Part shown: positions 24,576-26,786 of the stretch, piece after piece | How the letters are laid out: each line of letters opens with the position of its first letter | Position numbering within the stretch: position 1 is the first letter of the stretch | Virus record (IMG/VR): IMGVR_UViG_3300041411_000080 | Span: 1-64,000 of that record | DNA length: 64,000 nt | Reading direction: 5' to 3' (one strand) | Translations under genes and position numbers: made by a program | Notes under the pieces: generated by a model | The model's input: the letters and a program-made list of their open reading frames with translations, nothing else | Told to the model about the DNA's origin: nothing | Databases searched by the model: none

Positions 24576-24608
24576 AGACAAAATAAAAAAGAGTCCCCGA
24601 AGGGACTC
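24576..24608. repeat. 33-bp exact repeat, copy 1 (copy 2 at 45405..45437)
   Basis: AGACAAAATAAAAAAGAGTCCCCGAAGGGACTC. Confidence 0.85.
24591..24608 (-). terminator. intrinsic terminator, cUUCGg loop
   Basis: GAGTCCC-TTCG-GGGACTC-TTTTTTATTTT; identical to 45420. Confidence 0.85.
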
Positions 24609-24684
24609 ATTTGTGTAGATCAAGCAACCATTCACCATAGCTCTTTTTATAGCCATGGATAACAGCTGCTTCATAAGCACTCAT
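24607..24684 (-). CDS. 25-aa micropeptide MSAYEAAVIHGYKKSYGEWLLDLHK
   Basis: ATGA overlap with the upstream micro-ORF; SAYE.A...G....EWL motif. Confidence 0.6.
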   Translation of the reverse strand: MSAYEAAVIHGYKKSYGEWLLDLHK

Positions 24685-24731
24685 ATCCAATCTTCTTCAC
24701 GAGTGATTATGTCTGGGCGTTCATCATTCAT
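24681..24731 (-). CDS. 16-aa micropeptide MNDERPDIITREEDWI
   Basis: ATGA overlaps on both sides; GAGGA upstream. Confidence 0.5.
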   Translation of the reverse strand: MNDERPDIITREEDWI

Positions 24732-24766
24732 ACCCATTCCTCTTCAGATGTCTGGACGTACGTCAT
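24728..24766 (-). CDS. 12-aa micropeptide MTYVQTSEEEWV
   Basis: ATG 2 nt after the upstream TAA; AAGGT SD; ATGA overlap downstream. Confidence 0.5.
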   Translation of the reverse strand: MTYVQTSEEEWV

Positions 24767-24768
24767 GG

Positions 24769-24939
24769 TTAGATACCTTCGTATTCATCGCGAATACCCT
24801 CTCCTACACCACTGATGCCCCCACCCACTCCGATGCTATCGCCGAAGCCAGTGATTTCTTCACAGCCAATTTCTTGACTGCCGATAAGCAGATACATTTC
24901 TTTCATAGCAATTACCTCATGGTTGATTGTACATACCAT
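24769..24939 (-). CDS. small Gly/acidic protein (56 aa; alternative start 24906 gives 45 aa)
   Basis: TAATG coupling; GAGGT SD for the internal ATG. Confidence 0.6.
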   Translation of the reverse strand: MVCTINHEVIAMKEMYLLIGSQEIGCEEITGFGDSIGVGGGISGVGEGIRDEYEGI

Positions 24940-25172
24940 TAGGCGACCAGTTCTTTTAACCGGACTGGGTCCCAAGGAGTGCGTCCTTCCAACATCAGTT
25001 CACGTTCACTGAGTTCAGCTACGGGCTTACGACCTTCAGCTTTACGCCAAGCCTTATCGAGGTCCTCCACATGCTTATCAAGCTCTTTGGACTTCTTCTC
25101 AGTAGCCAATTCGAAGCCAGTGGTGCCAGGCTGCATCCACAACCCGCTTTTATGCCGTATTGCCTTAGCCAT
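24939..25172 (-). CDS. hypothetical protein (77 aa)
   Basis: GAGGA SD. Confidence 0.75.
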   Translation of the reverse strand: MAKAIRHKSGLWMQPGTTGFELATEKKSKELDKHVEDLDKAWRKAEGRKPVAELSERELMLEGRTPWDPVRLKELVA

Positions 25173-26098: not shown

Positions 26099-26194
26099 TT
26101 ATTCGTCAGTTGAAGGGGGTTGGACAGAAGTGGTACTGCCTGACAATAGCAGGCAGGTCACAATGAAGAGTACGATTATCCCGAATGTTACCAT
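26099..26194 (-). CDS. 31-aa single-TM microprotein
   Basis: MVTFGIIVLFIVTCLLLSGSTTSVQPPSTDE; start overlaps the upstream stop; fills the gap. Confidence 0.6.
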   Translation of the reverse strand: MVTFGIIVLFIVTCLLLSGSTTSVQPPSTDE

Positions 26195-26394
26195 TTTCGC
26201 ATCTTCCCACCTGAACCACGTTGATAGAAAGGCTGATCTTTGATCTTACGGTTAGTACGCTCACCGTGATCGTTTTTCATCTCACCTTTATACGCACTAC
26301 CCCAGTGTACACCGCAAAGCTCTTCCAGCTTATCCTTACCGCTTACTCGGCGACCGAAGTTACTGAGATGAATGTCTGACATTAGTCCAAGCAT
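26188..26394 (-). CDS. 68-aa protein with DHGERTN...KDQPFY.RG..GKM C-terminal module
   Basis: TAATG coupling; module shared with the next ORF. Confidence 0.75.
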   Translation of the reverse strand: MLGLMSDIHLSNFGRRVSGKDKLEELCGVHWGSAYKGEMKNDHGERTNRKIKDQPFYQRGSGGKMRKW

Positions 26395-26786
26395 TAGTAC
26401 CCCTTCATCTTACCGTTACGACCACGCATGTAAAATGGTTGGTCTTTTAGTTTGTAGTTGGTGCGCTCACCATGATCTGTTTTGCAGTCAGGGTTAATGC
26501 GGAAGATACCGTCCTCACAACCGGCATCTGGTCCCAACCAATCTTTGTCAAGGTCCTGATGGATTTGCTCTGCCAGAATAAGCTCGGTCATAGTAGAAGC
26601 AATCAACCGACTCCTTGCTCCGAAACCGGTCACCAGTATTGGAGAAGCTACGTACTCCTCCTTTGCAAAGACTGGCATCGGTTCATTACCAGTCACGCAG
26701 ATAATCACATTACTGTCATCGGTGGCAGAGTCGTCGAACGTCATTTCGAGAACCGGTGAAGCGCCGATCGTATTCAAAGAAAGCAT
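26394..26786 (-). CDS. 130-aa protein with DHGERTN...KDQPFY.RG..GKM C-terminal module
   Basis: module shared with 26188..26394. Confidence 0.75.
   Translation of the reverse strand: MLSLNTIGASPVLEMTFDDSATDDSNVIICVTGNEPMPVFAKEEYVASPILVTGFGARSRLIASTMTELILAEQIHQDLDKDWLGPDAGCEDGIFRINPDCKTDHGERTNYKLKDQPFYMRGRNGKMKGY

What the first reader, a model, noticed from the sequence alone, without database searches (positions are those of the whole stretch)
24607..24939. Chain of translationally coupled micro-ORFs (12, 16 and 25 aa) ending at a terminator
Seen: after 24769 stops, MTYVQTSEEEWV-ATGA-MNDERPDIITREEDWI-ATGA-MSAYEAAVIHGYKKSYGEWLLDLHK fill the gap with no spare bases. The first two share CCAGACAT DNA and an EE[ED]W[VI] C-terminus. 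Known: SAYExAxxxGxxGxxxEWL is a recurrent phage tail-associated motif. Inference: functional micropeptides (acidic-Trp docking motifs or decoys) invisible to normal annotation.
Basis: partly seen in the sequence, partly recalled or inferred. Interest (0 to 1): 0.7.

Follow-up and report, generated by a model that had tools for sequence, protein, structure and literature searches.

The report
Conserved overlapping micro-gene cassette, jumbo phage
The chain of tiny reading frames is real and is a conserved cassette of four to five overlapping genes for 12-45-residue peptides in a group of giant Pseudomonas phages. At least three of them are kept by selection on their amino-acid sequence, but what the peptides do is still unknown.

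Summary
On the minus strand, three ATG-started frames of 12, 16 and 25 codons are linked by ATGA overlaps and end on an intrinsic terminator. The pattern alone is not improbable: random genomes of the same composition hold about 24 such chains. Conservation is what makes it real. The window is a 321-kb relative of phage 201phi2-1, and I found the same cassette in 13 other phage sequences.

- **orfB** (16 aa) is under strong purifying selection, with 5-7 synonymous and no amino-acid changes against the three most distant relatives that keep the core.
- **orfC** (25 aa) is one free-standing unit of the 25-residue SAYE repeat of the phage's own tail fibre. It also occurs as an unannotated ATGA-coupled micro-gene in phages Psa21 and D6.
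- **orfA** (12 aa) is not a separate family.
- In the shared block every substitution is silent in f2 and changes orfA.
- **P1**, the upstream Gly/Glu-rich 45-aa gene, belongs to the cassette.

The docking or decoy function is untested. The cassette is a new, partly annotated family of phage micro-genes.

The parts
24769..24906 (-). P1: 45-aa Gly/Glu-rich repeat peptide with an IGCEEI motif, GxGEGI repeats and the end DEYEGI. SD GAGG lies at 24918-24915. A longer frame from ATG 24939 is probably not used.
   Evidence: The family aligns across 10 genomes, and a profile search found 8 more members. All natural indels are net multiples of 3: 21, 2+1, 6 and 9 nt. One variant changes the upstream ATG at 24939-24937 to ATT.
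24744..24788 (-). f2: overlooked 14-aa frame MNTKVSNHDVRPDI. It starts at an ATG inside the D-E-Y codons of P1 and overlaps the end of P1 and the first 23 nt of orfA. It is in the same frame as orfB.
   Evidence: In 11 genomes all variation in the DVRPDI codons is at third positions, at least 7 silent events, apart from V to E in Phabio. Each silent change alters the orfA frame. A start codon with an SD-like stretch is present in each.
24728..24766 (-). orfA: 12-aa MTYVQTSEEEWV. Its ATG lies 2 nt after the P1 stop. Its last codons carry the SD (GAGGA) and the start of orfB.
   Evidence: Identical 39 nt in the window, L013, L015, Viktualia and 201phi2-1. Relatives carry versions of 13, 20, 41 and 44 aa. 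The long forms L012 and L018 give pS 0.75 and pN 0.32. In L017 this ATG is the only ATG found in frame upstream of the orfB body.
24681..24731 (-). orfB: 16-aa MNDERPDIITREEDWI, ATGA-coupled to orfA. An alternative in-frame start lies at 24737 (MGM...).
   Evidence: Present in all 14 cassette sequences at 16-36 aa. The core is diverged in three: L016 (NERLGVIT), L018 (end RDEDCL) and Phabio gp355 (REEDWI end only). For the 14-codon core, window vs 201phi2-1, Viktualia and L012 gives 6, 7 and 5 silent changes and no replacements. No variant in 24671-24789 in four natural strains.
24607..24684 (-). orfC: 25-aa single SAYE unit with a GYKKSYxEWLLDL core, ATGA-coupled to orfB. Its stop overlaps the terminator stem.
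   Evidence: Homologues lie in the same position in L013, L015, L016, L017, L020, L022 and Phabio. Free-standing ATGA-coupled copies occur in Psa21 and D6. pN/pS is about 0.15-0.2. It is 54% identical to a unit of the phage's own fibre.
24576..24608 (-). Intrinsic terminator: 7-bp G+C-rich stem, TTCG loop and a T-run.
   Evidence: The same hairpin follows the cassette in Viktualia, 201phi2-1, L012, L014, L015, L017 and L022. A second copy lies in this genome at 45420.

Best explanation
This is a conserved cassette of overlapping micro-genes in a clade of plant- and soil-associated Pseudomonas jumbo phages (201phi2-1, Viktualia, Phabio and uncultured relatives).

**Layout.** One mRNA ending at the terminator carries, in three reading frames:
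- P1, 27-49 aa across relatives, Gly/Glu-rich, ending EEYEG plus a hydrophobic residue.
- One or two copies of an acidic unit of the form Y-D-x-R-P-D-I-I-T...E-E-[ED]-W-[VI].
- In about half of the genomes, a single 25-29-aa SAYE helix-loop-helix unit (orfC).

orfB is the intact acidic unit. The second copy was split by a small frameshifting deletion into f2 (ends RPDI) and orfA (ends EEEWV). Both halves have stayed open.

**Shown here.** The reading frames, their overlaps, their conservation, and purifying selection on f2, orfB and orfC.

**Inferred: how it is translated.** Ribosomes start at SD-like stretches that are themselves Gly/Glu codons of the preceding frame. They pass between frames by termination-reinitiation at TAA-NN-ATG and ATGA.

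**Inferred, about 0.25 likely: what it does.** The products act as free peptides. Each acidic peptide ends in a hydrophobic or aromatic residue with a free carboxylate. This would work as a short 'tail-like' ligand competing for a basic or hydrophobic pocket on a host or phage protein.
For: - The cassette is present in 14 sequences.
- orfB core: 5-7 silent and 0 replacement changes against the three most distant relatives that keep the core.
- orfB and orfA carry no variant in four natural strains, while P1 next to them has 24 variable sites.
- f2: at least 7 silent events and 1 replacement in DVRPDI across 11 genomes.
- orfC: pN/pS of about 0.15-0.2, plus free-standing copies in Psa21 and D6.
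- P1: indels are multiples of three, and a profile search found 8 further members.
- Rearrangements always leave a translatable route to the DERPDIIT...EEDWI body: L016 fuses f2 to orfB, L017 fuses orfA to orfB, and L014 has a deletion.
- Neighbouring genes are only about 70% identical in DNA and 28% in protein.
Against: - There is no expression or peptide evidence. Only metagenomic contigs could be laid.
- At population scale orfC shows 6 replacements to 2 silent changes, which is close to neutral.
- orfC is absent from 5 of 14 cassettes and broken in L018.
- The conservation of the EEEWV codons of orfA is confounded by the SD and start codon of orfB.
- The N-terminal residues of orfA vary freely.
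- No partner protein is known. A complex prediction of P1 + orfB + orfC gave no answer.
- No phage protein in this genome ends in the same motifs.
Confidence: 0.7

Rival explanations
1. The act of translation matters, not the peptides. The frames would be a ribosome relay or leader-type device that controls the terminator, mRNA stability or a downstream start, perhaps through nascent-peptide effects.
For: The frames tile the RNA up to the terminator, and the orfC stop lies on the stem. Predicted hairpins bury the orfC start. SD sequences are embedded in the preceding frames.
Against: - Amino-acid sequences are conserved through saturated silent change.
- The cassette sits at the 3' end of its transcription unit, and the gene after the terminator differs between relatives.
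- The hairpin over the orfC start is not kept in L017.
- In nucleus-forming phages transcription and translation are separated (established knowledge for 201phi2-1-like phages). Ribosome-coupled attenuation is therefore unlikely.
- No alternative antiterminator fold was seen.
Confidence: 0.1
2. The split unit is rejoined by recoding. A +1 shift, or read-through at the f2 stop, would make ...DVRPDI-EEEWV or a fusion with orfB, which lies in the same frame.
For: f2 and orfB share a frame and are separated by one stop. The f2 upstream part and the downstream part of the orfA frame are the conserved pieces, while the N-terminus of orfA varies. ATC-TGA is kept in 9 genomes.
Against: L020 has TAA instead of TGA at this stop. 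There is no slippery P-site codon and no upstream SD-like stimulator. No local RNA structure is predicted (z from 0 to +1.4). orfA has its own ATG in a conserved TAA-NN-ATG context. That ATG is the only ATG found in frame upstream of the orfB body in L017.
Confidence: 0.05
3. The frames are decaying fragments of a once longer gene, or chance frames in an untranslated 3' region, with no present function.
For: Chains like this are common in random sequence. Frequent indels remodel the locus. orfC is lost or broken in several genomes.
Against: Purifying selection acts on three frames. Starts, stops and overlaps are kept across 14 sequences whose neighbouring genes are about 28% identical in protein. 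No intact longer gene was found by tblastn.
Confidence: 0.05
4. The conserved stretch is an RNA or DNA element, such as a small RNA, a protein-binding palindrome or a promoter. Alternatively the real gene is the 95-aa antisense frame 24655-24942 on the plus strand.
For: 39 nt are identical in five genomes. There is a GACGTACGTC palindrome. The 221-nt region folds better than shuffles, z = -4.1.
Against: - There is no Rfam match near threshold.
- The invariant block itself is unstructured.
- The palindrome is broken in L012, L017, L020, L021 and L022, and only at sites silent in f2.
- The antisense frame is 10 aa in L015, 24 aa in L014 and 14 aa in Phabio.
- All neighbouring genes and the terminator face the minus strand.
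Confidence: 0.04
5. P1 and the acidic peptides are precursors of modified peptides (RiPP-like), with repeated IGCEEI/GVGEGI cores.
For: P1 is a short, repetitive, Cys-containing acidic peptide family whose modules shuffle.
Against: No modifying-enzyme family was found in ten neighbouring genes. The neighbours differ between Phabio and the window.
Confidence: 0.04

Closest known systems
Phabio gp353, gp354 and gp355, Viktualia CDS0073, and 201phi2-1 gp358 (annotated 'hypothetical proteins')
   Same: They are the same gene families in the same order with the same overlaps. gp353 and gp358 correspond to P1. gp354 is the unsplit unit MNKYDERPDIITNEEEWV. gp355 and CDS0073 correspond to orfB.
   Different: Nothing is known about them. 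No record annotates f2, orfA or orfC. In the window lineage the gp354-type unit is split over two frames.
25-residue SAYE-type repeat of phage tail-fibre and collagen-like proteins (PHROGs 15437, 14726, 19976 and others)
   Same: orfC aligns over a full unit with the phage's own fibre repeat at 54% identity and has the same length.
   Different: orfC is a single free-standing unit with its own signature (GYK[KG][ST]Y rather than GFxGTE). It is encoded among non-structural genes and shared as a micro-gene with Psa21 and D6.
Translationally coupled overlapping genes (ATGA and TAATG termination-reinitiation), common in phage operons
   Same: The same junction types are used. The SD of the next gene lies inside the end of the previous one.
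   Different: Four to five consecutive frames of 12-45 codons use all three frames, with out-of-frame overlaps of 20-23 nt.
Very small phage effector peptides such as T4 Stp (26 aa), and acidic C-terminal tails such as the SSB tip and T7 gp2.5 (recalled from memory: analogy only)
   Same: They are similar in size, and they have an acidic run followed by a hydrophobic C-terminal residue.
   Different: There is no sequence similarity, no target is known, and nothing was tested here.
Leader-peptide attenuators (trpL, tnaC type)
   Same: Frames of 12-25 codons lie next to an intrinsic terminator.
   Different: The cassette lies at the end of an operon, not ahead of it. It has no alternative hairpin and no runs of regulatory codons. 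The peptide sequences are conserved across genera.

Membership tests
SAYE-type tail-fibre repeat (for orfC) | A 25-residue unit with the S-A-Y-[EQD]-x-A-x3-G-[FY]-x-G-x3-[EQ]-W-L spacing | tested here: met
   Alignment with a unit of the phage's own fibre gives 54% identity at full length. A loose regular expression hits orfC. The PHROG fibre-family E-value is 0.05 for the window peptide and about 1e-3 for the Psa21 and D6 homologues.
SAYE-type tail-fibre repeat (for orfC) | Occurs as tandem units inside a long structural protein | tested here: not met
   orfC is a single unit with its own start and stop in 8 cassettes, and also in Psa21 and D6.
Protein-coding gene under selection (f2, orfB, orfC) | Excess of silent over replacement change in relatives that were not found through the peptide itself | tested here: met
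   orfB gives pS 0.5-0.9 and pN 0-0.06, apart from L016 at 0.16. orfC gives pS 0.65-0.9 and pN 0.1-0.17. f2 shows at least 7 silent events and 1 replacement.
Protein-coding gene under selection (orfA, 12 aa) | Amino-acid conservation not explained by overlapping constraints | tested here: inconclusive
   All changes in its first 7 codons are replacements forced by silent sites of f2. Its last 5 codons double as the SD and start of orfB. The long forms give pN/pS of 0.43.
Translated micropeptide | Ribosome occupancy or detected peptide | not testable with these tools
   Only metagenomic contigs were available for this phage.
Leader-peptide transcription attenuator | Alternative antiterminator pairing with the terminator arm, and a regulated gene downstream | tested here: not met
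   The terminator folds on its own with no competing helix. The downstream genes differ among relatives.
RiPP precursor | A neighbouring modifying enzyme | tested here: not met
   Pfam and PHROG scans of ten neighbours found only an RNA ligase and families of unknown function.
Known RNA family | Rfam match at gathering score | tested here: not met
   The best scores are 23 and 20 bits against cut-offs of 43 and 50, and both lie on the terminator.

The most novel reading that the evidence does not exclude
The cassette makes some of the smallest phage-encoded effectors yet proposed: free 12-16-residue acidic peptides. Their ends (RPDI, EEEWV, EEDWI, EEYEGI) would mimic an acidic C-terminal tail and block a tail-binding pocket of a host or phage protein, with the SAYE unit as a separate docking module. 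Module shuffling among P1, f2/orfA and orfB would then reflect an arms race over that pocket.
Probability: 0.2. Interest if true: 0.75.

Novelty: new member of a known kind. Interest (0 to 1): 0.5.

Why it matters
Genes of 12-16 codons are almost never called or studied. Here comparative data show that at least three such frames are kept by selection on their amino-acid sequence. They lie in phages that include 201phi2-1, a laboratory model for the phage nucleus.

This gives concrete, cheap targets for the question of what micro-proteins do in jumbo phage infection:
- synthetic peptides;
- start-codon knockouts;
- targeted mass spectrometry.

It is also a clear example of a short repeat unit split over two overlapping frames with both halves retained. 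In addition, it flags unannotated genes in five published genomes.

Tried and rejected
- **Collection scans.** Degenerate back-translation patterns of orfA and of the orfA-orfB junction were run over viral, metagenome and genome collections. They found only 201phi2-1 and Phabio.
- **tblastn.** P1 of the window and Phabio gp353 found nothing new.
- **Word-indexed protein search.** It refuses queries under 40 aa.
- **N4 gp8 lead.** A weak Pfam hit of the fibre repeat to N4 gp8 (E = 0.08) was followed up. The gp8 sequence has no SAYE motif, so the lead was dropped.
- **Pfam and solved structures.** No Pfam family matches any micro-peptide, and no solved structure matches the fibre repeat by sequence.
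- **PhuZ-tail decoy idea.** The phage's PhuZ ends ...DDSIDDDGMVV. This is only generically acidic, so I did not pursue it.
- **Protein-atlas look-alikes of P1.** Only sub-threshold Gly-rich fragments came back.
- **Fibre model.** A single-sequence AlphaFold model of the fibre N-terminus reached pLDDT 49.6. I used it only for the two-short-helices pattern and did not search folds with it.
- **Complex prediction.** The rerun with window peptides alone scored 0.02, which counts as no answer.
- **Literature.** I found nothing on these peptides. The 'gp358' in PMC10643120 carries a different phage's accession (YP_009217437.1) and is not this gene.

Full report
**1. What is in the sequence**

All genes in this part of the window lie on the minus strand. 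Reading that strand:
- A small gene stops at TAA 24771-24769, and two bases follow.
- orfA runs 24766-24728 (MTYVQTSEEEWV).
- The last A of its final sense codon and the first two bases of its TGA stop form the ATG of orfB, 24731-24681 (MNDERPDIITREEDWI).
- The same ATGA overlap leads into orfC, 24684-24607 (25 aa, MSAYEAAV...LDLHK).
- The stop of orfC overlaps the stem of a canonical intrinsic terminator.

The pattern itself is not rare, however. This genome has one chain of three or more ATGA-linked frames of 8-40 codons. Simulated genomes with the same trinucleotide statistics have 24.4 +/- 5.7. The case has to rest on conservation.

**2. Where the window comes from**

The record is a complete 320,858-bp virus genome with terminal repeats. 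The region is syntenic with Pseudomonas phages 201phi2-1 and Viktualia: an RNA ligase, then small genes, then this locus. The genome encodes a PhuZ-like tubulin. It is therefore a relative of the nucleus-forming 201phi2-1 group.

Divergence from those relatives is deep:
- Conserved genes are about 69-72% identical in DNA.
- The 242-aa gene two genes upstream is 28-29% identical in protein.

Close strains occur in rhizosphere, soil, plant, freshwater and food metagenomes.

**3. The cassette is conserved**

I found the same locus in 13 other sequences:
- 201phi2-1 and Viktualia.
- Phabio, which belongs to another genus and carries the cassette in another genomic place.
- Ten metagenomic contigs. 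L012-L017 were reached through flanking proteins. L018 and L020-L022 were reached through a P1 profile.

The general order is as follows:
- P1, then a TAA-NN-ATG or overlapping start.
- One or two acidic units, with ATGA between them.
- An optional SAYE unit.
- The same kind of terminator.

The orfA-orfB ATGA junction is present in 12 of 14 sequences. Phabio's annotators called three of the frames (gp353, gp354 and gp355, of 27, 18 and 29 aa). Viktualia's called one, and 201phi2-1's called P1 (gp358).

**4. orfB is a gene under strong selection**

The core DERPDIIT + [RQN]EEDWI is identical in protein, or differs only at the residue before EEDWI, in the window, L012-L015, L017, L020, Viktualia and 201phi2-1.
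- L021 and L022 each carry one further replacement.
- L016 (NERLGVIT), L018 (end RDEDCL) and Phabio gp355 (REEDWI end only) are diverged.

Against 201phi2-1, Viktualia and L012 the window has 6, 7 and 5 silent differences and no replacement in 14 codons. That gives pS of 0.63-0.88 and pN of 0.

In four natural strains 3-5% diverged from the window, no variant at all lies between 24671 and 24789. P1 next to it has 24 variable sites. Length varies from 16 to 36 aa through in-frame insertions before the core. One strain in run X5 begins orfB like 201phi2-1 does.

**5.

Phabio gp354 is an 18-aa unit, MNKYDERPDIITNEEEWV, clearly a paralogue of orfB. L020 differs from it by a 5-nt deletion, and the window lineage by 8 nt. 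The deletion puts the N-terminal half and the C-terminal half in different frames.
- The N-terminal half survives as f2 (window 24788-24744, MNTKVSNHDVRPDI). It starts at an ATG inside the D-E-Y/E-Y-E codons of P1, downstream of an SD-like AGGTGA or GGAGAGGG.
- The C-terminal half survives as orfA.

Across 11 genomes, every change in the DVRPDI codons is at a third position. I count at least seven independent silent events. The one replacement is V to E in Phabio. Each silent change alters an orfA residue: T/M, Y/C/F, V/A, Q/L, T/I. So f2 is the selected frame in that block.

The 39-nt identity among five genomes first looked like an ultra-conserved element. It dissolves into three overlapping constraints:
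- f2 coding;
- the GAGGA Shine-Dalgarno and ATG of orfB;
- the single Trp codon.

The block has no predicted RNA structure and no Rfam match.

orfA itself is probably also translated, for these reasons:
- Its start sits in a conserved TAA-NN-ATG context.
- In L017 a 20-nt deletion fuses it in frame to the orfB body, and it is then the only ATG in frame upstream of that still-conserved body.
- It exists as 20-, 41- and 44-aa versions, which share SDGWEDY...FWDLVLKSD in L012 and L018 with pN/pS of 0.43.

Selection on the 12-aa form could not be separated from the overlapping constraints.

**6. orfC**

The phage's own 1,448-aa collagen-like fibre has many tandem 25-residue SAYE-type units, and these match tail-fibre PHROGs. 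orfC is exactly one unit, 54% identical to a fibre unit, but it has its own signature, GYK[KG][ST]Y.

Homologues follow orfB in L013, L015, L016, L017, L020, L022 and Phabio. The last two are a 29-aa Trp-rich variant. The copy in L018 is N-terminally broken. Five cassettes lack orfC.

The best tblastn hits elsewhere are unannotated 24-25-aa frames in Psa21 and D6. Each is coupled by ATGA to an unrelated small gene near the tRNA cluster.

Between relatives pN/pS is 0.15-0.2. Among close strains there are six replacements to two silent changes. Constraint on orfC is therefore weaker than on orfB.

A low-confidence model of the fibre suggests each unit is two short helices.

**7. P1**

P1 most likely starts at 24906. 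It has a GAGG Shine-Dalgarno 7 nt upstream. The ATG at 24939 is ATT in one strain and is absent from L014.

P1 is a repeat peptide with MKE at the start, IG[CSA][EQD]E[IVM] motifs, GxGEGI repeats, and the end EEYEG plus a hydrophobic residue. It is highly variable, but all its indels are net multiples of three.

A profile search of 1.84 billion representatives found 12 members of 29-49 aa:
- One member ends in QEEEWI.
- Several members carry the TKEWS module that also begins orfB in L012.
- One P1-like gene stands alone in an abundant 210-kb scaffold (L019).

Short modules are evidently shuffled among the cassette genes.

**8. How it most likely works**

Shown:
- five overlapping frames;
- conserved starts, stops and overlaps;
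- purifying selection on f2, orfB and orfC.

Inferred: expression from one mRNA by internal initiation and termination-reinitiation.

The products, apart from orfC, are strongly acidic. Each ends in an acidic run followed by a hydrophobic or aromatic C-terminal residue. My best guess, at about 0.25, is that they are free tail-like ligands competing for a binding pocket.

Ribosome-coupled attenuation is unlikely, for two reasons. These phages transcribe inside a protein shell that excludes ribosomes (established knowledge). The gene after the terminator also differs between relatives.

Recoding at the f2 stop is not excluded. It is made less likely by the TAA stop in L020 and by the lack of any stimulator.

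The 95-aa antisense frame is an artefact of acidic codons, and it is 10-47 aa in relatives. No modifying enzyme is nearby.

**9. Verdict**

This is a real and conserved family of phage micro-genes. It is only partly annotated and is functionally unknown. The overlap architecture is unusual, but it belongs to a known kind of feature.

Noticed in passing
L005 2501-2575 (Psa21, NC_062581) and L006 2501-2578 (D6, OQ363659): Unannotated 24-25-aa SAYE-unit frames. Each is ATGA-coupled to a 56-59-aa gene in an array of small paralogous genes next to the tRNA cluster. In D6 the next gene starts on an overlapping ATG.
   Followed up: partly
L008 2643-2732 (Phabio, NC_062582): Unannotated 29-aa Trp-rich SAYE-like frame. 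It is TAATG-coupled to gp355 and followed by a terminator. L022 has the same variant.
   Followed up: partly
L002 3018-3278, minus strand (201phi2-1, NC_010821): Unannotated 86-aa frame between gp358 and the cassette, where the number gp359 is missing from the record. Its last residues are the f2 peptide ...MTKYDVRPDI. A terminator-like hairpin lies just upstream.
   Followed up: partly
G000 129985-134331, minus strand (L007): A roughly 1,450-aa collagen-like fibre protein with many tandem SAYE-type 25-residue units interleaved with GTNGTNG stretches.
   Followed up: partly
window 24576-24608 and about 45420: The same terminator sequence occurs twice in the genome. Public assemblies break or branch at it.
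   Followed up: partly
window 26188-26394 and 26394-26786, minus strand; Phabio gp356 (L008 2769-2930): Small genes sharing a C-terminal motif GERTNxKxKDQPFYxRGxxGKM (phrog_32646). They lie near the cassette in both genera.
   Followed up: no
window 24620-24720, minus strand: Two strong predicted RNA hairpins. One buries the orfC start and the other lies inside orfC (region z = -4.1). The first is not kept in L017.
   Followed up: partly
L019 1195-1317: A P1-like gene without an EYEG end and with no acidic peptides after it. It lies in a 210-kb scaffold, and its protein is recorded in 158 blocks of the public collection.
   Followed up: no
window 24727, run X5: A second strain in one freshwater metagenome has orfB beginning ATGAACAAAGAAAC (MNKET...), as in 201phi2-1, directly after the conserved block.
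   Followed up: partly
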